A DNA stretch of 64,000 nt, taken from contig NW_003314285.1 of assembly GCF_000143415.4 (NCBI RefSeq), forward strand, positions 895,370-959,369, given 5' to 3'. The translations under genes and the position numbers were made by a program. Positions 9,880-52,317 of the stretch are shown here, one piece after another (the stretch's first letter is position 1; each line of letters opens with the position of its first letter). The DNA is from Selaginella moellendorffii. Taxonomy: Eukaryota > Plantae > Lycopodiophyta. Below the pieces are notes generated by a model that saw nothing but the letters and a program-made list of their open reading frames with translations, made no database searches and had not been told where the DNA came from.

Positions 9880-10117
9880 TGTAGAGTTGGAGAGATTTGG
9901 GGAAAAAGCGATCGATCCTGACAATCTGGGGGATTGGTTCTTAAAGATCGCGGTGGTTTAGTTAGACTTTGCGAGCATCTTCTCGCCGCGAAAGTCTAGA
10001 GTTGACTTTGACATTGGGATCGATCGATCGCCAGAGATTTAGTTCGTTTTGGAGTATGCTCTGGGTAGAAACGTTCCAATCGATCACAAACTCTCCCTCT
10101 CTTGCGAGTTTTTAAAA
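9880..10117. promoter_or_regulatory. 238-bp shared bidirectional promoter region of the two kiwellin-RLKs
   Basis: Gap between divergent ATGs at 9879 (-) and 10118 (+); contains TTGACTTTGACA (W-box core plus near-copy) at about 10002-10013. Confidence 0.6.
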
Positions 10118-12008
10118 ATGCTACTAGTAATGTTGTTTGCCTTAGTAGTTCCTCATACATTAGGGCAAACGATCCAGGGCAAGGATGAGGAGAAATGCGC
10201 CTTGGCGCCTCGCTGCACGAATCCAGGTCGGTGCTCCAATGGCTCGGCCTGCTACCCCGACACGATGCGCTCCGGCAACCGATCGCTTCGCGCTGGATCT
10301 TGCCTCGACGATTCATCCGCCGGCTTGTAACATCTGCGCCCCCAGCTCCACTCTGATCTACAATGGCACGCAGATGTGCCCCGAGTGCTGCGTTCCCGGC
10401 CTGGCCTATCGCTTCTATGCGTGCTCGCCGCCACTCCAGATCGTCAACCGGGCCGTGCTCTACTCCACGACTTTTGGCGAGAATCTGTCCTGCACGGATC
10501 AAGTCTTTTCCATCCAGGATCAGGTGGTATCGCTGGCTTCCGGGTGGATCCAGCGCAACTTCAGCATTTGTCTCACCAATATCAACATCACTGCTCCAAA
10601 CAATCGCAGCGTCGTGGCCAAGATCGTGGACGAGTGCTCGTCCAAAGCTGGATGCACTGCCGCCACTGCTTACTGGGAGCCGTGTGCTCCCAACGCCATC
10701 GCTGGAACTCCCGGGGTGTGGAGCGCTCTTGGATACGATCCGGGGGATGGAATTCTCAGGGACGTAAGCTGGAGCAAAACGAATGCGTCAGTGAGTGCCT
10801 CTGAAGGAGGAGGAGGAAGATCCAAGAAGAAAAACACTGGGGTTATCGCTGCAAGTGCTGTGGTGGGATTCGTGCTCTTGGCAATGGTTCCAGTGGGATT
10901 TTATTGGATCAAGATCAAGGCGAGGTTGGCTCTCAGGAAAAGGAACCAAGAACAGGTTGAGGAGATCAGTACGCTAGGTGGTCTTCCCAAGCAATTCAGC
11001 TACCATGACTTACACAAGGCCACAAGGAACTTTGCGAAGAAGTCGATGCTTGGAGAGGGAGGATTTGGCATGGTTTTCAAAGGCAACCTTTCAGATGGAA
11101 CGACAGTGGCTGTGAAGAGAATGGACGTGGAGATTGAGGGATCGAACGAAGGGCAGCAGCAGTTCAAAGCGGAAGTTTTGTCAATTGGAAGCATCCGTCA
11201 CTACAACCTCGTCCAGTTGAGAGGCTTTTGCATACACGGGCCTTCTTCTCTGCTGGTTTACGAGTACATGAGCAACGGTGCTCTGGACAAATGGATCTTT
11301 CGAAAGGACTCGCGGTTTCTAGATTGGAGCCAGAGGCACCAAGTTGCGGTGGACGTTGCTAGAGGCTTAACATATCTTCACGAAGGCTGTAGAGAACAGG
11401 TGCTTCACTTGGATATCAAGCCGCAGAACATTTTGCTGGACGAGAACCTGAGAGCGAGGATCGCAGACTTTGGCCTCTCGAAGCTCGCGGAGAGGGGGAA
11501 GAGCTACGCAGTGACGGCCATGAGAGGCACTCCGGGATACATGGCTCCGGAGTGGCTCCATACAAAGGTGACGGACAGGACCGACGTTTACAGCTTTGGG
11601 ATCGTGCTGCTGGAGCTGCTAAGCTCGCGGAAGAGCTTGGAGATTCAGAAGCACTCCTCGAGCGTGGCTTCCACCTCGGCGGCTTCTTCATCGTCGGCGT
11701 CATCGCAGGGGGTCTTCATTCTCGGTCACACCGCGGCGAGGCTCTTCCACAGTGGAGATGTGTCGACGCTGGTGGACAGGGGCCTGGAAGTGGACCTGAG
11801 CGTCGCGGAGAGATTTACGAAGATCGCGCTATGGTGCATTCAAGAGGATTCCGCGAAGAGACCGTCCATCGGAAACGCTCTTGCCATGCTCGAAGGTGAC
11901 TTGGAGGTGGGAGACTTGCCTCCTCCTCCTCCAAGCGGCGCAAGCTCGCCGGTTCTGAGATCTCCGGGCATGGATTCGTGGAGTAGCTCGCTACAATCTG
12001 GCACCTGA
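10118..12008 (+). CDS. Kiwellin-ectodomain non-RD receptor-like kinase; copy 2, with an apparent 1-nt frameshift at about 10325
   Basis: ATG 10118 gives a signal peptide (MLLVMLFALVVPHTLG) and Cys-rich segment ending SCLDDSSAG. The rest is in another frame: CNIC...YACSPP, VVSLASGW, VVAKIVDEC, VWSALG, TM, GEGGFG, VAVK, HLDIKPQN, DFG, MRGTPGYMAPEW. Removing one T joins them. Confidence 0.85.
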
Positions 12009-34237: not shown

Positions 34238-34747
34238 ATTGTTTAAAATTTCTTATTTTAAAATAACCAATATCAATATCATCAATCATCAACTATTAAG
34301 TTAACTAGGAACTTAAACTCATCAACCAATGCAACCAACTCATGAAGTGGTCAATCAACTTGGTGAATTGATCAATGAACTCATGAGTTGACTAATAAAC
34401 TAATAAATTGATCAATCAACTTATCAAATGATAAATTCATAATTCAATTAAATGAAGTGAAATGGTACTTTATCAAACTCAAACTTATAAACTTATTGGG
34501 TTTGAAAATTGGCACATTGCCTTTAGACAATTTGGTGCCTTGTTTACATGTCAAACTACAGCAAGTAGTTCTTCAGATTCTTGCAGAAAATTTTGAATAG
34601 TTCTCTGGCTTCTAGTGGCTTTTTTGAATTGCAGTCTCATTTGGTATGCCTGACTTTTAATTTCATTCAAGGACTTCTGTATACTTTTGAGTATAAATCG
34701 AAGGAAACTCTCTCTCACTGTATTCATATACTCTGCAGAAAACCATT

Positions 34748-35066
34748 ATGGCAATCAAATCATCCAAGGCTGTTGTAATTTCCATGGTGGTGCTGGTGCT
34801 GGTTCTATTGGGTAAGTGTATGATTCAGTGTGGAAGGATTGCCCTATGAATATATACAGGAGGTGCGATGCAAGCTGAAGCCGCAGGACAGAGAGCGCTC
34901 CTCCAGATAGGTGAGCGACCAATTTCCTGAAACTTTCGTTAATGATTTTTCTTTTGTAGTTTGCCCTGCTGTGTGCCAATACACTAGAGTTGTTTGCAGA
35001 GGCGTTCTGTTTAATGATACATGCTACAACGCTTGCACTCTGCCGCGGGGATGCCGACCAGTTTGA
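34748..35066 (+). CDS. Small secreted 6-Cys peptide, Pin-II (potato inhibitor II, I20)-like; copy A, intact, 73 aa
   Basis: Exons 34748-34811, 34860-34910 and 34960-35066 with GT-AG introns of 48 and 49 nt give MAIKSSKAVVISMVVLVLVLLGGAMQAEAAGQRALLQIVCPAVCQYTRVVCRGVLFNDTCYNACTLPRGCRPV*. Confidence 0.8.
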
Positions 35067-35389
35067 CATCCAGATTGAAAGTACTGAATAAAGCCGTTTA
35101 TAATTGAGTATACCTGATGGTAACTCAGTATTGAAGTACTTGAGCTTTGTTGAAGTCTTGTCGATATCATACGAATATGAAGCTTTTGCTGTATTTCTCA
35201 CTTTGAAAAGGTAGCAGAAGAAAAATTTCTGAGTTCGGACTTTCTTTGCATGTGTACCTTGAGATTGTGATTCTAATGAGATAATCTTTGTGACAAGTCT
35301 CGGGAGGCTTGACTTTTCTGGTTGTAGCGTTTACAAAATCAGAGCGTTTGTGTTACATTCTGTGCTTGGAGCGAAATGCTTGGTTGGAA

Positions 35390-35721
35390 ATGGCAATGAA
35401 ATCAAATATCATGGCAATTGCTGTGGTGCTGGTCGTTCTCTTGGGTATAATCTCGGGTTGAGTGAAGAATTCTTGTCATTCTTGTTAATGTAACAGGGGT
35501 TGCGATGCAAGCTGAAGCTGCGGGACAGCGGACGCTCCTCCAGCGACGTGAGAGATCAATCTTACATCAGACAATTCGATTTAACTTTCTTCTAGTTTGC
35601 CCGGCAGTGTGCCAGTACACTAAAGTGGTTTGCAGAGGCGTTGCCAGTTAAAGCATGCATCTGAATAGGACTGCATGCTTTTAACTCTTGCAATCTCCCG
35701 CGAGGATGCCGACCAGTGTGA
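35390..35721 (+). pseudogene. Pin-II-like peptide copy B, disrupted in exon 3
   Basis: Same three-exon structure (MAMKSNIMAIAVVLVVLLG/VAMQAEAAGQRTLLQR/LCPAVCQYTKVVCRGV); an 18-nt insertion brings in TAA; the tail CNLPRGCRPV* is still recognisable. Confidence 0.78.
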
Positions 35722-36030
35722 CTTCTTATTATTATTGTTAAGGAGTCACAGCTAGCTTACAAACGAGGAAGGATAAGTTGAAGCACGAATCCGGAAATGC
35801 TGGCCTCGATCTCCACTCTGGTTCCCGAGCAAGTGAGAGACTATCTACACCGTAACTCTAGCAGTCAAGTGCCACACGCACCACAATTTGGCAAAGCTCA
35901 AACCTTTTTGCGAAATTGCTCAAAAACGCTTGTTCCAGGTAAGAGCTTTCGAGAAATTTTCCAAGAACCGGCCAATTTGCTGAAAATTGAACCTTCTGTT
36001 TCGATTAGAACTCGTGATTTTATTTTGTAG

Positions 36031-36126
36031 TTCGCGCTGCGGTGTGCCATTCTCTAGAGTCGTTTCCAGAGGCGTTCTGTTTGATACAACGCTTGCAATC
36101 TCCCACGAGAATGCCGACCAGTTTGA
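36031..36126 (+). pseudogene. Pin-II-like peptide copy C, degenerate exon 3 only
   Basis: TTTTGTAG acceptor followed by an exon-3 homolog (GTGTGCCA...AGAGGCGTTCTGTTT...GCCGACCAGTTTGA) with Cys losses and deletions. Confidence 0.7.
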
Positions 36127-36261
36127 CATCCAGAACAAAATTGCTGAATAAAGAAGTGAGTTTGTGAAACCTCCTAAAGAACCCAAAGATCAAAAGACAA
36201 GGTGGATGCTGCTTGATATGTTTTTCTTTTATTACACCTGTATTTCACAAGTAGAAGAACT

Positions 36262-36379
36262 CGTGGTGCTGGTGGTTCTCTTGGGTATAATCTTGGCTTG
36301 ATCGTGAAGATTCCTTGTCGTTCTTGTTAATGTATCAGGCGTTGGGATGCAAGCTGAAGCTCCTGGACAGCGGGCGCTC
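36262..36379 (+). pseudogene. Pin-II-like peptide copy D, partial exon 1, intron 1 and exon 2
   Basis: GTGGTGCTGGTGGTTCTCTTGG/GTATAATC...CAG/GCGTTGGGATGCAAGCTGAAGCT...GGACAGCGGGCGCTC, very similar to copy B; no start codon or exon 3. Confidence 0.7.
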
Positions 36380-36414
36380 TATCTTAGTCATCGCTGCATT
36401 ACCTGAGCGAAGCA

Positions 36415-36870
36415 AGGATCATCAAGTCTCCACGGAGAAGCACCTGTTTGATACCAGGGGAAAGAGCGTCACACCGGACAACTGAGCACCGCACTGGAGA
36501 TGACTACGACTTTGAGGCCCGCCGAGAGCTTGCACCTGGAAGATAGCTTGGGTTACGGCAAAATCCTCGCACAGAACCGCTCTCAATTCATATCCTCGAG
36601 GGAGCAAAAACAGTATGAAGTTTTGGACCGGTGGATTGCCAAGCACAACGAAAGGCTGTTTTGCTTGCTGGGATACTCTATGGCGAGTGGATGCTGGCCA
36701 ATCACTCGATCCACTACACTAGGATACCGGACTACTTCATCGCATTCGACATCCTGGACGTTGAAATGGAGAGATTTTACAGCCAAGAGAGGTTTAATGC
36801 TGTGATCAAGCAAGCGAACGAGCTCGAGATAGAGAAGTCAATAGAAAAAGTTCTTCATGGCGGATGGGAT
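36415..36870 (+). pseudogene. RNA ligase (Rnl2-like nucleotidyltransferase) pseudogene fragment
   Basis: Across frameshifts: IIKSPR/KHLFD, KILAQNRSQFI...LDRWI, ILYGEWMLANHSIHYTRIPDYFIAFDILD. The catalytic KxDG motif is missing. Confidence 0.65.
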
Positions 36871-37139
36871 GCTGCTCAAGAGCAAGGCCAAGTGTGTCTT
36901 GTAACTCAGCATACAGGGTGTTGGAGTAGCAGGAATCAAGGAGAGGGTAGTAGAGAGCAACAGCAGGAATCTACTATGAGCGCATATAAGAGTGCCTGTA
37001 CATGCATTTGAAAGTGTTACTCTTTCCATCATGGGATCGGGTTTTCTGTCTTGGAGCTGATGGCACTTAGTATTTTTCAGCATGAAACGGCAGAATAGTA
37101 GTGATCCATCTTGTCGTTTATAGTGTAAGCATAGCAGTT

Positions 37140-40272: not shown

Positions 40273-41532
40273 ATTATAAGGATTCATCAATAGAAATATA
40301 TCACTAAGAATATAGAAATCTTTTCTTTTTCTTTATCCTCAATTTGGATGGCCTCCTTAATTTCTAGAAATATAAAAACAAAAAGAAGCTTAGAAAGAGA
40401 GATTTAAACTTTCATTTTAAAAACATATTTATTTCCTCTATAGTGTGAATAAATTTTGATTTTAAAACCTTATTCTTATAATACAAAGATTTTAGATAAC
40501 TATATTTTTTCATAATGTCACTCTATAGTGTGCTCTATGCTGTTAGGTTGCCCTTCTTTTATGAAGTTCAAGCCATGGTTCTCTACACCAATAGTGATCT
40601 TTTATATGAGTAAGCAAGAAATCGCTATTGTGTTATAATTTTTTATTTTATAAAAAATAGTTATAAAAAATAGAAAAGGCTTGTCATTTATATATTTAAA
40701 TATATACATATAAAACTATTTATGAAACATTAAAATTGGACATCTATGGTGTATATCTGACTTTTAAATAATAAAATATAAAAAATTGATTTGTTTTAAT
40801 ATTTTCTTCATTTATAAAAAATTAAGTTTAAATAAATGTTTTGTATTAGTTTATATATCAATATTTAATGGGGCCTTAGAAATGTAAACCTATGAATTTA
40901 TAAATTTTAAGTTTAATAAAATTTAACCAATATTTTAAATGGATTAAATTATGCAATATATAAATATTAGTTGGAAATTGTAAGATTTACTAAAATAATT
41001 AATTTCCATATACAATAACTTCATTTAGGAAGGCAATTTTTACTAATATTATTATAGTTTGTTTAAAATTTAAAATAAAAAATTTTTATTTAATAAATTT
41101 AAATTTGTTCATAAAATTTTACCTAATTTTTTAGTACATCAGTTTTTAATTTAATTATGAAATATACTAAGTAGCAATAAACTTTATGTTATTGAAACTA
41201 CTTTCTTAACTTAAATGTAAAAAAGTAAAATAAAATAATCTTCTAAAACTTTTATTATCTAATTTGGTTTGTGTTGTTAAAAAATTATTTAAACTTGTTT
41301 TCATATTATTTTTTTAATATGAAAACCTTATTTTCTTACCTTTACCTTTTTTTTTTCTTAGCGAGTCAAGTTCGACTCCCTCTCGCGGTCGACCACAAGA
41401 TAAGCTGGAATTTGTAAGCCGTCGGATCGCTATCCCGCTCTGGTCTTGACGGTCAGGATCTCTCGAGCCAGGATACTCCAATCAAATCCCCTGTTTGTAG
41501 AGAAAGAGCGCACGCCCAGGAGGAGCATAGCT

Positions 41533-42504
41533 ATGGCGTCGGCTCTTGCTGCCTCGTCCTTCACGGGCTGTGGCGTCCGCGATCTCGTGGGCTATGCCGC
41601 TGCCTCGTCGACATCACAGGTCGCGTCACGGAGCAGCGGCATTGTAGCGCGATTTGGACTCGGGAAGAAGAAGGGTACCAAGAAGGTGACCAAGAAATCC
41701 TCCTCGTCGGGCGATGCAAATCGCCCGCTGTGGTTTCCGGGGGCGAAATGCCCAGACTACCTCGACGGATCGCTGGTGGGCGACTATGGATTCGATCCAC
41801 TTGGACTTGGTAAGCCCCCAACCTATCTCCAATTCGATGTGGATTCGCTGGATTCGAGCCTCGCCAAGAACATGCCTGGCGAGCTCCTGGGCGAGCGTGT
41901 CGAGGATCTGTCGACAATCCGGGCCACTCCCCTCCAGCCTTACACGGAGATCTTTGGACTCCAGAGGTTCCGCGAGTGCGAGCTCATCCATGGCCGCTGG
42001 GCAATGCTTGCGACCCTTGGCGCGATCGCGGTGGAGACTTTCACTGGCGTTACTTGGCAAGATGCTGGCAAGGTAAGCTCCGAGTCTCTATCCTCTTTCG
42101 CCATTGGATGATCATCTAATTGCTCCTGGACGGATGAAATGCAGGTGGAATTGGACCAAGGGCCCAGCTACTTTGGATTCTCTCTGCCATTCACCATCAC
42201 CGCGCTGGTGTGGATCGAAGTCCTGGTGATTGGATTCATTGAATTCCAAAGAAACACGGAGCTCGATCCAGAGAAGCGGCTGTATCCTGGCGGGAGCTAC
42301 TTTGATCCGCTTGGGCTGGCGGCGGATCCCGAGAGGAAGGAGGTGCTAAAGCTGGCGGAGATCAAGCACGCGAGGCTGGCGATGGTGGCGGCGTTTGGAT
42401 TCGCTGTGCAAGCGGCAGCCACGGGCAAGGGGCCACTCGACAATTGGGTCACTCACTTGAGCGATCCCCTTCACACCACCATCATCGACACCTTCTCCAA
42501 GTAG
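41533..42504 (+). CDS. LHCB4: Light-harvesting chlorophyll a/b protein CP29
   Basis: Exons 41533-42072 and 42145-42504; [32 protein letters not shown]29-specific insert, [38 protein letters not shown]. Confidence 0.97.
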
Positions 42505-51936: not shown

Positions 51937-52317
51937 TCAAGGAATCCCAAAGAGAACCAGCACTCCAGCGAGCATCAGCCACACAAGATGGACGAGAAGT
52001 AAAGCCCGCCCGGCCATGGCGCCCTTTCCCAAACCTCCTCCATTTCCAGGGCTACAGTAGCCGGTGTGCGAGATCTCCACGCCGTCGCAAGCGGCATCGC
52101 GAGAGCCACACCAATACGTCACGCCGTTCGCCCCACACACTGGATCCGCACGCAGGCAGCTCACCGGGCACTCGATCTTGGCGGCATCTCCCCCGTCTAG
52201 AACCCTAGAACCTGAATCGATGATCGACAAGCGCTGGCCGTCCTGATCGCCGGAGACGAGCGCCAGAAATGCAAGGAGCTGGAGCGCCCACAAGAGCGAA
52301 TTCTTCTTCCTTCCCAT
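51937..52317 (-). CDS. Kazal-type serine protease inhibitor with C-terminal TM segment
   Basis: Signal peptide; CPVSCLRADPVCGANGVTYWCGSRDAACDGVEISHTGYC; ALLLVHLVWLMLAG C-terminal helix typical of plant Kazal proteins. Confidence 0.93.
   Translation of the reverse strand: MGRKKNSLLWALQLLAFLALVSGDQDGQRLSIIDSGSRVLDGGDAAKIECPVSCLRADPVCGANGVTYWCGSRDAACDGVEISHTGYCSPGNGGGLGKGAMAGRALLLVHLVWLMLAGVLVLFGIP

What the first reader, a model, noticed from the sequence alone, without database searches (positions are those of the whole stretch)
34748..36379. Hidden tandem family of minimal 3-disulfide Pin-II-like secreted peptides
Seen: a three-exon 73-aa gene plus three decayed copies, none in the ORF track. 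Predicted mature part C-PAV-C-x6-C-x8-C-YNA-C-TLPRG-C-RPV. Known: the Pin-II repeat is C-P-x-x-C...C...C-x-N-C-C-x4-G-C...C, in which the first Cys of the CC pairs with the last Cys; exactly these two are missing here (NAC for NCC, early stop). Pin-II genes also have a phase-1 intron splitting a Gly in the signal peptide, as here. Extra features are a second intron and a RALL/RTLL pro-segment of the RxLL subtilase-site type, with P1 = Ala. Inference: a compact, possibly ancestral-type I20 inhibitor of elastase- or subtilisin-like proteases under birth-and-death evolution.
Basis: partly seen in the sequence, partly recalled or inferred. Interest (0 to 1): 0.78.

Follow-up and report, generated by a model that had tools for sequence, protein, structure and literature searches.

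The report
Spikemoss mini Pin-II-like secreted peptide genes
A spikemoss (Selaginella moellendorffii) locus holds one intact, unannotated three-exon gene and three decayed copies for a tiny secreted six-cysteine peptide that looks like a cut-down potato-type-II protease inhibitor, but neither that kinship nor any activity is proven.

Summary
A three-exon gene (34748-35066, +) encodes a 73-aa precursor: a signal peptide, a short conserved pro-segment, and a 34-aa six-cysteine domain (C-x3-C-x6-C-x8-C-x3-C-x5-C). Three decayed copies follow it. Exons are far better conserved than introns between copies 1 and 2, and dN/dS is 0.19.

One paralogue is in the databases: EFJ22131.1 of S. moellendorffii, a fused 198-aa model. 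Its first 72 residues use the same two exon junctions and keep all six cysteines. No other relative turned up among 1.84 billion representative proteins.

Kinship to Pin-II (MEROPS I20) is partly supported.
- For: the cysteine spacing and local motifs match published Selaginella Pin-II domains. The phase-1, Gly-splitting intron in the signal peptide is the Pin-II hallmark. A language-model search with the paralogue's precursor returned Pin-II clusters as its three best named hits, at a lead-level score of 0.82.
- Against: there was no Pfam PF02428 hit and no sequence match to any solved structure. Fold searches had no power at 35 residues. The domain has six cysteines, not eight, and the gene has an extra intron.

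Function is untested. My best guess is a secreted defence peptide, possibly a standard-mechanism serine-protease inhibitor. This scan had already noted the same family on other DNA of this genome (s1-366176, s1-402731).

The parts
34692..34698 (+). TATAAAT, a TATA-box-like motif 50 nt upstream of the ATG
   Evidence: read; copy 2 has no such motif upstream
34748..34811 (+). Exon 1: start codon and most of the signal peptide (21 codons plus the first base of a split Gly)
   Evidence: donor tgg|GTAAGT
34812..34859 (+). Intron 1, 48 nt, phase 1, GT..AG
   Evidence: EFJ22131.1 uses the same junction (LLG|GAMQ)
34860..34910 (+). Exon 2: end of the signal peptide (AxA site ..AEA|A) and the conserved pro-segment with R-A-L-L
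   Evidence: 14 of 16 residues shared with copy 2 despite synonymous changes
34911..34959 (+). Intron 2, 49 nt, phase 1, GTGAGC..TAG
   Evidence: EFJ22131.1 uses the same junction (LLQR|VCPAV)
34960..35066 (+). Exon 3: Val plus the 34-aa six-cysteine domain, then TGA
   Evidence: 76% identical to residues 38-70 of EFJ22131.1
35087..35092 (+). AATAAA poly(A)-signal-like motif 21 nt after the stop
   Evidence: read; also kept after copy 3 (D5)
35390..35721 (+). Copy 2: full-length pseudogene with an 18-nt insertion carrying TAA (35643-35660) and a 1-nt frameshift (35679-35682); closest to EFJ22131.1
36030..36126 (+). Copy 3: exon-3 remnant; first and third Cys codons changed, 1-nt and about 11-nt deletions, G to E before the last Cys
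36263..36379 (+). Copy 4: remnant of exon 1 (no ATG), intron 1 and exon 2; homology ends at 36379, next to an RNA-ligase-like sequence

Best explanation
Copy 1 is a real, intact, unannotated gene of a small family so far seen only in Selaginella moellendorffii.

Processing (inferred). The 73-aa precursor enters the secretory pathway. Signal peptidase most likely cuts after ..AEA. The short conserved pro-segment, with R-A-L-L, may then be removed by a subtilase. That would leave a cationic peptide of about 35-44 residues (net +3 in the Cys domain).

Fold (predicted). A small three-stranded beta structure held by three disulfides. The strand register suggests pairs 1-5, 2-4 and 3-6.

Origin (about even to slightly better odds). 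The domain is most likely a cut-down derivative of the L-H type repeat of the plant's own potato-type-II (I20) inhibitors. It ends three residues after the ..G-C motif. It therefore lacks the last beta-hairpin and its cysteine, and the partner cysteine of the CC pair has become Ala.

Function (about one in three). If so, it would act outside the cell as a standard-mechanism serine-protease inhibitor that presents the loop C-P-A-V-C, with P1 = Ala.

Shown: the gene structure, the coding constraint, the paralogue and the decayed copies. Inferred: processing, disulfide pairing, kinship and activity.
For: Gene model and cysteine pattern.

Coding constraint: exons are conserved over introns and flanks, and dN/dS is 0.19 with p = 2.6e-4.

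Independent model with the same junctions and all six cysteines: EFJ22131.1 / SELMODRAFT_416968.

Structure prediction: pLDDT 82.8 from the single sequence and 88.6 with a 5-row alignment, with the same beta topology each time.

Pin-II side:
- Published S. moellendorffii Pin-II domains show VC-x3-C-x6-C...C-x2-CC-x5/6-G-C and the motif [ST]-I-P-Q-G-C, against T-L-P-R-G-C here (PMC4189545, supplement 1G).
- Pot II genes have a phase-1 intron in the signal peptide that splits a Gly (PMC2259423), as here.
- Ala at P1 occurs in catalogued Pin-II domains (PMC8188708).
- The language-model feature search with residues 1-72 of EFJ22131.1 gave PF02428 clusters of 76-87 aa as its top three named hits. 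Seven of the ten best named hits share that family or clan.

From my own knowledge, not checked here: in Nicotiana alata T1/C1 the first Cys of the CC pair bonds to the last Cys of the repeat. These are the two cysteines absent here.
Against: - No PF02428 match at E <= 10 for the exon-3 peptide or for EFJ22131.1.
- No solved Pin-II chain was found by sequence or by profile.
- Foldseek and VIA-align found nothing, although no chain at all reached Z 2 with the second model, so the test has no power at 35 residues.
- The atlas score of 0.82 is below the 0.9 at which such hits are trusted. The exon-3 peptide alone gave only an irrelevant hit at 0.75.
- The domain has six cysteines, not eight, and would lack two of the three Pin-II strands.
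- The gene has a second intron that Pot II genes lack.
- The supposed reactive loop is identical in copy 1, copy 2 and EFJ22131.1, while variation sits in the C3-C4 loop.
- I obtained no transcript evidence myself.
Confidence: 0.42

Rival explanations
1. This is a lineage-specific secreted cysteine-rich peptide unrelated to Pin-II; the shared cysteine spacing and the split-Gly intron are convergent or chance. It would act as a cationic antimicrobial or membrane- or wall-binding defence peptide, not as a protease inhibitor.
For: - No statistical sequence or fold link to Pin-II.
- Net charge is +3 to +4 with a hydrophobic core.
- Only one relative was found among 1.84 billion representatives, and it is from the same species.
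- Phase-1 introns at signal-peptide ends and split Gly codons are common in small secreted-peptide genes (my own knowledge).
- The same genome holds other orphan secreted Cys-rich arrays (earlier notes s1-380472 and s1-374872, unchecked).
Against: Several independent resemblances point to one family that was named in advance: the spacing, the T-L-P-R-G-C motif, the intron, and the paired loss of two cysteines said to bond to each other. The unbiased atlas search also returned that same family first.
Confidence: 0.33
2. This is a secreted signalling peptide. It would be released by a subtilase at the conserved R-x-L-L site and sensed by a receptor kinase, as with RALF- or EPF-type cysteine-rich ligands.
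For: The pro-segment AMQAEAAGQR-x-LLQ is almost invariant among copy 1, copy 2 and EFJ22131.1 despite synonymous changes. The CPAVCQYT[RK]VVC part is equally invariant, as expected for a ligand with a fixed partner.
Against: There is no similarity to any known ligand family. Rapid birth and death of tandem copies is more typical of defence genes. Nothing links the kinase pair to this locus beyond distance.
Confidence: 0.12
3. This is a dying gene cluster. Copy 1 merely still has an open frame, is not expressed or not functional, and will go the way of the three neighbouring pseudogenes.
For: Three of the four copies here are broken. No 28-89-aa protein in the 5.8-billion-cluster collection shares words with it.
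Against: - Copy 1 keeps consensus splice sites, a TATA-like motif, AATAAA, the start and stop codons and all six cysteines.
- dN/dS is 0.19 since the split from copy 2, with dS of about 0.54.
- An intact paralogue exists.
- Earlier follow-up notes on sister loci say the family is transcribed and spliced (s1-366176 and s1-402731; not checked by me).
Confidence: 0.1

Closest known systems
Potato type II (Pin-II, Pot II) serine-protease inhibitors: MEROPS I20, Pfam PF02428. The closest are the two-domain Pin-II proteins of S. moellendorffii (gene models 438273, 438274, 438284, 444521; PMC4189545) and the single L-H repeat proteins of angiosperms.
   Same: - A secreted small precursor of about 75 aa, as in single-repeat Pin-II.
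- A phase-1 intron that splits a Gly in the signal peptide.
- The order C-P-x-x-C, then x6, then C, a loop, C-x-N-x-C, then x4-G-C.
- V before the first and third Cys.
- T-L-P-R-G-C here against [ST]-I-P-Q-G-C there.
- Tandem arrays with decaying copies.
- The language-model search places the paralogue's precursor next to PF02428 clusters.
   Different: - Six cysteines instead of eight.
- The peptide ends three residues after G-C, so the last hairpin is missing.
- The C3-C4 loop is shorter (8 residues against 10-13).
- The gene has an extra phase-1 intron between the pro-segment and the domain.
- It has a conserved R-x-L-L pro-segment.
- There is no Pfam or solved-structure sequence match.
- The putative reactive loop is invariant among paralogues.
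Alpha-hairpinins (plant C-X3-C-Xn-C-X3-C defence peptides and trypsin inhibitors)
   Same: Two C-X3-C pairs that would bond outer-outer and inner-inner (1-5, 2-4). Small, cationic and defence-type. Some members inhibit trypsin.
   Different: The defining motif allows no Cys inside Xn, and the 6C form is C-X3-C-X3-C...C-X3-C-X3-C (PMC11591084). Here a Cys sits inside Xn and the spacings are x6 and x5. AlphaFold2 predicts strands, not helix-loop-helix.
Other orphan secreted Cys-rich peptide arrays of S. moellendorffii noted by this scan (s1-380472, s1-374872)
   Same: Tiny, unannotated, secreted, cationic, in tandem and partly decayed.
   Different: Those are Trp-rich hairpin repeats with a different cysteine pattern. 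I found no sequence relation and did not test for one.

Membership tests
Pin-II / Pot II inhibitors (MEROPS I20, Pfam PF02428) | Significant match to the family profile PF02428 | tested here: not met
   hmmscan at E <= 10 gave no PF02428 hit for the exon-3 peptide, the 51-aa ORF or EFJ22131.1. HMMER's filters drop most hits above E of about 0.1, so only a weak match is excluded.
Pin-II / Pot II inhibitors (MEROPS I20, Pfam PF02428) | Eight conserved cysteines forming four disulfides per repeat | tested here: not met
   The domain has six cysteines. Published S. moellendorffii Pin-II domains also lack one or three of the eight (PMC4189545), and a natural Capsicum domain that lacks two disulfide bonds is described (PMC8188708).
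Pin-II / Pot II inhibitors (MEROPS I20, Pfam PF02428) | Reactive-centre tripeptide between two cysteines (C-P-x-x-C), followed by a strand ending in Cys | tested here: met
   C-P-A-V-C then x6-C. The same C-x3-C-x6-C is in the SmPinII-b domains, and C-P-x-x-C-x7-C in angiosperm members. This is a motif-level test only.
Pin-II / Pot II inhibitors (MEROPS I20, Pfam PF02428) | C-x(1-2)-C-C-x(5-6)-C 'CC loop' with G before the last Cys | tested here: inconclusive
   Here it is C-Y-N-A-C-T-L-P-R-G-C. The spacing is exact if Ala replaces the first Cys of the CC pair, and the motif resembles C-A-T-C-C-[ST]-I-P-Q-G-C of SmPinII-b.
Pin-II / Pot II inhibitors (MEROPS I20, Pfam PF02428) | Two-exon gene with a phase-1 intron in the signal peptide that splits a Gly codon | tested here: inconclusive
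   The phase-1 intron splitting Gly (g|ga) in the signal peptide is present, as described in PMC2259423. However, exon 1 codes for 21 residues rather than 12-17, and the gene has a second intron.
Pin-II / Pot II inhibitors (MEROPS I20, Pfam PF02428) | Pin-II fold (reactive loop tied to a three-stranded sheet) | tested here: inconclusive
   The AlphaFold2 models have three strands, with the first and third at the positions expected from Pin-II. Foldseek and VIA-align returned nothing for any fold.
Pin-II / Pot II inhibitors (MEROPS I20, Pfam PF02428) | Inhibition of serine proteases by the standard mechanism | not testable with these tools
   This needs a folded peptide and enzyme assays.
Alpha-hairpinins | Motif C-X3-C-X(4-20, no Cys)-C-X3-C, or 6C form C-X3-C-X3-C-Xn-C-X3-C-X3-C | tested here: not met
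   A Cys lies within Xn, and the spacings are x6 and x5, not x3 (against PMC11591084).
Alpha-hairpinins | Helix-loop-helix fold | tested here: not met
   Both AlphaFold2 runs predict strands only. This is a prediction, not a structure.
Plant secreted cysteine-rich peptides (generic class) | N-terminal signal peptide, small mature part, even number (at least 4) of conserved cysteines | tested here: met
   Basic n-region, 16-residue hydrophobic core and an AxA site (judged by eye, as no signal-peptide predictor was on hand). Six cysteines are conserved in the paralogue.

The most novel reading that the evidence does not exclude
A natural miniature Pin-II: a domain of about 35 residues with three disulfides. 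It would have arisen in the spikemoss lineage by cutting the repeat off after the G-C motif and losing exactly one disulfide. It would still present a canonical C-P-A-V-C inhibitory loop and still inhibit a serine protease. That would make it the smallest member of family I20 and a natural minimal scaffold for loop grafting.
Probability: 0.3. Interest if true: 0.62.

Novelty: new variant of a known kind. Interest (0 to 1): 0.5.

Why it matters
If the kinship and the activity hold, this shows how far the Pin-II fold can be trimmed in nature (one disulfide and one hairpin removed) and still be kept by selection. It would offer a roughly 35-residue natural scaffold for inhibitor engineering, and it would extend the already unusual Pin-II repertoire of lycophytes. 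Even if it is unrelated to Pin-II, it is a clear case of a selected, secreted peptide gene that annotation missed or fused to a neighbour (EFJ22131.1). That matters for peptide catalogues of early vascular plants.

Tried and rejected
Searches that found nothing or nothing useful:
- The word search with the 51-aa ORF holding exon 3 found nothing, so no 28-89-aa protein in the collection shares words with it.
- The word search with EFJ22131.1 residues 1-72 found only itself.
- The full HMMER search gave two other hits, P0001 and P0003. Both are repeat proteins that match only around ..C-Y-N-A.. in many stretches, and I set them aside as chance.
- The ESM atlas search on exon 3 alone returned a Gallidermin cluster at 0.75, which is irrelevant.
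- Sequence and profile searches of solved structures gave only a chance phospholipase A2 hit at E = 9, then nothing.
- Four fold searches were blank.

Alternatives checked and dropped:
- The alpha-hairpinin reading fails on motif and on predicted fold.
- The 148-aa antisense ORF 34755-35201 has no family above cut-off, and the substitution pattern fits the sense frame.
- A window-wide scan for canonical Pin-II 'CC loop' motifs found none.
Full report
**What is there.** The window is plant DNA. The only database relative of the peptide is a Selaginella moellendorffii protein.

- Exon 1 (34748-34811) has the ATG and 21 codons of a signal peptide, and ends on the first base of a Gly codon.
- Intron 1 (34812-34859) is 48 nt, tgg|GTAAGT...CAG.
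- Exon 2 (34860-34910) completes the Gly. It encodes the end of the signal peptide (an AxA site, ..AEA|A) and a short segment with R-A-L-L.
- Intron 2 (34911-34959) is 49 nt, GTGAGC...TAG, and is also phase 1.
- Exon 3 (34960-35066) gives Val and then the 34-residue domain C-PAV-C-x6-C-x8-C-YNA-C-TLPRG-C-RPV and a stop (window:34962-35063:+).

A TATAAAT lies 50 nt before the ATG (34692-34698) and an AATAAA 21 nt after the stop (35087-35092). Introns of about 50 nt are normal for this species (my own knowledge; the genome paper was not held).

Each exon was used by reference.

**The copies.** Repeat finding, blastn/tblastn and an alignment show three more copies and none elsewhere in the window.
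- Copy 2 (35390-35721) has all three exons and both introns. It carries an 18-nt insertion with an in-frame TAA (35643-35660) and one extra T in the run 35679-35682.
- Copy 3 (36030-36126) is exon 3 only. The first and third Cys codons are changed, and there are a 1-nt and an 11-nt deletion.
- Copy 4 (36263-36379) is a start-less piece of exon 1, intron 1 and most of exon 2. Its homology ends at 36379, next to an RNA-ligase-like sequence.

**Is it a gene or a chance frame?** Between copies 1 and 2 the exons are 80-84% identical without gaps. The introns are 61-65% identical with gaps, and the flanks about 51%. Over 45 alignable codons there are 13.5 synonymous and 9.5 non-synonymous differences. 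That gives dS 0.54, dN 0.10 and dN/dS 0.19 (Fisher p = 2.6e-4). The stretch CPAVCQYT[RK]VVCRGV has four synonymous changes and one conservative change.

The antisense 148-aa ORF has no family support. So the sense frame has been under purifying selection since an old duplication.

**Relatives.** The word-index search with the 51-aa ORF around exon 3 found nothing. The exhaustive HMMER search of 1.84 billion representatives gave one true hit, P0002 (E = 3.9e-8, 76% identity over 33 residues). The two other hits are repeat proteins that I take for chance.

P0002 is EFJ22131.1, SELMODRAFT_416968, a 198-aa 'hypothetical protein' of S. moellendorffii on a 1.84-Mb scaffold. Its residues 1-72 are colinear with exon 1, exon 2 and exon 3 here. 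The two junctions are the same (..LLG|GAMQ.. and ..LLQR|VCPAV..) and all six cysteines are kept.

It then runs on for 126 unrelated residues where our gene stops. It is therefore a fused annotation, and its CRP part is closest to the broken copy 2. A word search with its first 72 residues found only itself.

Two earlier follow-up notes of this scan describe the same family on other pieces of this genome. They say it is transcribed and spliced (s1-366176 and s1-402731); I did not verify that.

**Test of the Pin-II reading, negative side.** Pfam gave no PF02428 hit at E <= 10 for the exon-3 peptide, the 51-aa ORF or P0002. Searches of solved-structure sequences found no Pin-II chain, either with the peptide or with a family profile.

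AlphaFold2 gave a confident model in one of five runs from the single sequence (pLDDT 82.8). With a five-row alignment it gave a confident model in two of five runs (88.6 and 88.1). The topology was the same both times: strands at about 8-13, 16-23 and 32-34 of the 35-mer.

Foldseek and VIA-align returned nothing useful. With the second model no chain in 48,161 reached Z 2. These searches simply have no power at this size, and they say nothing for or against Pin-II.

**Test of the Pin-II reading, positive side.**

(i) Santamaria et al. 2014 (PMC4189545) report four two-domain Pin-II proteins in S. moellendorffii that already depart from the eight-Cys rule. Their alignment (supplement 1G) shows two features in the b domains. 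One is an L-H unit VC-x3-C-x6-C-x12-C-x2-CC-x6-C. The other is a half unit C-A-T-C-C-[ST]-I-P-Q-G-C.

Here the peptide has VC-x3-C-x6-C-x8-C-x3-C-x5-C, with C-Y-N-A-C-T-L-P-R-G-C. The spacing is exact if Ala stands for the first Cys of the CC pair. One published a-domain row (SmPinII-2a, ..C-S-N-C-T-L-E-P-G-C) is also printed with a single Cys where the other three have CC, though that supplement text is machine-read and misprints other CC pairs.

[quoted passage not shown] That is exactly the case here. It is weaker evidence than it looks, because phase-1 introns after G favour split Gly codons in general (my own knowledge).

(iii) From my own knowledge of the N. alata T1/C1 structures, not confirmed in an open paper here, the first Cys of the CC pair bonds to the last Cys of the repeat. 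Those are the two cysteines missing here, so the loss would remove one whole disulfide and leave none unpaired.

(iv) The language-model feature search of the ESM atlas, given residues 1-72 of P0002 and restricted to named clusters, returned PF02428 clusters of 76-87 aa as ranks 1-3. The score was 0.82 with 142 of 256 shared features, and seven of the ten best named hits share that family or clan. The tool says scores under 0.9 are leads only, and that a third of shuffled proteins get a first hit of 0.8 or more. Even so, the family returned is the one proposed beforehand, out of thousands. I count this as real but modest support.

The exon-3 peptide alone gave nothing.

**Strand positions.** The first predicted strand (..YTRVVC) and the last (CRP) sit where the L-fragment strand and the start of the first H-fragment strand lie in Pin-II (topology as described in PMC2259423). 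The middle strand replaces what is a linker in Pin-II.

In the predicted hairpin register, Cys2 faces Cys4. Cys1 and Cys5 lie at the open end, and Cys3 is next to the strand holding Cys6. That fits pairs 1-5, 2-4 and 3-6, the pattern expected from Pin-II minus one bond. This is an inference from secondary structure only; I could not read the model coordinates.

**Rival families.** The alpha-hairpinin motif (C-X3-C-Xn without Cys-C-X3-C, or the 6C form with X3 spacings; PMC11591084) is not met, and the predicted fold is not helical. No other Pfam family matched.

**What argues for caution.**
- The domain would keep only the reactive loop, one strand and the CC loop of Pin-II.
- The gene has an additional intron.
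- The putative reactive loop C-P-A-V-C is identical in copy 1, copy 2 and EFJ22131.1, while changes cluster in the C3-C4 loop and around Cys5. Fast-evolving inhibitors usually vary at the reactive site. An invariant loop fits a fixed target or a structural role.
- 'Ancestral-type' is not supported. Full Pin-II genes exist in the same genome, and no relative was found outside it, so a derived, truncated offshoot is the simpler history.

**Likely working.**
- Shown: a selected gene for a secretion-type precursor with six conserved cysteines.
- Inferred: signal-peptide cleavage after AEA; possible subtilase trimming after R-A-L-L (the pro-segment is nearly invariant); a cationic (+3) disulfide-locked mini-protein in the apoplast.
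- Most likely role: defence.
- My odds: gene real and functional, about 0.85. Descent from Pin-II, about 0.55. Serine-protease inhibition through the C-P-A-V-C loop, about 0.3-0.35. Ala at P1 occurs in catalogued Pin-II domains with unknown targets (PMC8188708).
- Alternatives: an unrelated antimicrobial Cys-rich peptide, a processed signalling ligand, or a silent relic.

**Verdict.** I rate it a new variant of a known kind, of moderate interest. The same family was already flagged twice by this scan on other DNA of this genome.

Noticed in passing
window 36380-37100 (+), ORF 36631-37011: An RNA_ligase (PF09414) match (E = 6.7e-10, profile positions 67-141 of 171) starts right where copy 4's homology ends. 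It is either a neighbouring gene or fragment, or an insertion that cut copy 4.
   Followed up: partly
window 35797-36029 (+): An ATG-started 44-codon open frame with no family ends on a phase-1 donor (ccag|GTAAGA at 35929/35930). The acceptor TAG at 36027-36029 leads into the copy-3 exon-3 remnant. This may be a chimeric pseudogene or exon-shuffling relic.
   Followed up: no
protein P0002 (EFJ22131.1), residues 73-198: The annotated paralogue runs on for 126 residues beyond the point where the gene here stops. That tail has no Pfam family, although UniRef names the entry 'VDE lipocalin domain-containing'. It is likely a fused or mis-spliced gene model.
   Followed up: partly
window 10098-10247 (-) against P0002 residues 139-187: A weak tblastn match (31% identity, E = 0.002) links the tail of EFJ22131.1 to the region of the kiwellin-type receptor-kinase pair in this window. 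It may hint that the two loci are paralogous segments.
   Followed up: no
window 34332-34441: Five tandem copies of a 20-nt unit (CAA[CT]..ACT.AT.A type) lie in the AT-rich stretch upstream of copy 1.
   Followed up: no
window 41446-42111 (+): An ORF with a chlorophyll a/b-binding domain (PF00504, E = 9e-19): an ordinary light-harvesting-complex gene 6 kb downstream.
   Followed up: no
window 34755-35201 (-): A 148-aa antisense ORF covers the whole of copy 1. It is the longest ORF here but has no family above cut-off, and it is not the frame under selection.
   Followed up: yes
window 52135-52170 (-): A lone C-P-x-x-C-x6-C string (CPVSCLRADPVC) in a six-frame scan. There is no further cysteine pattern, so it is probably chance (0.37 such strings expected per shuffle).
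   Followed up: no
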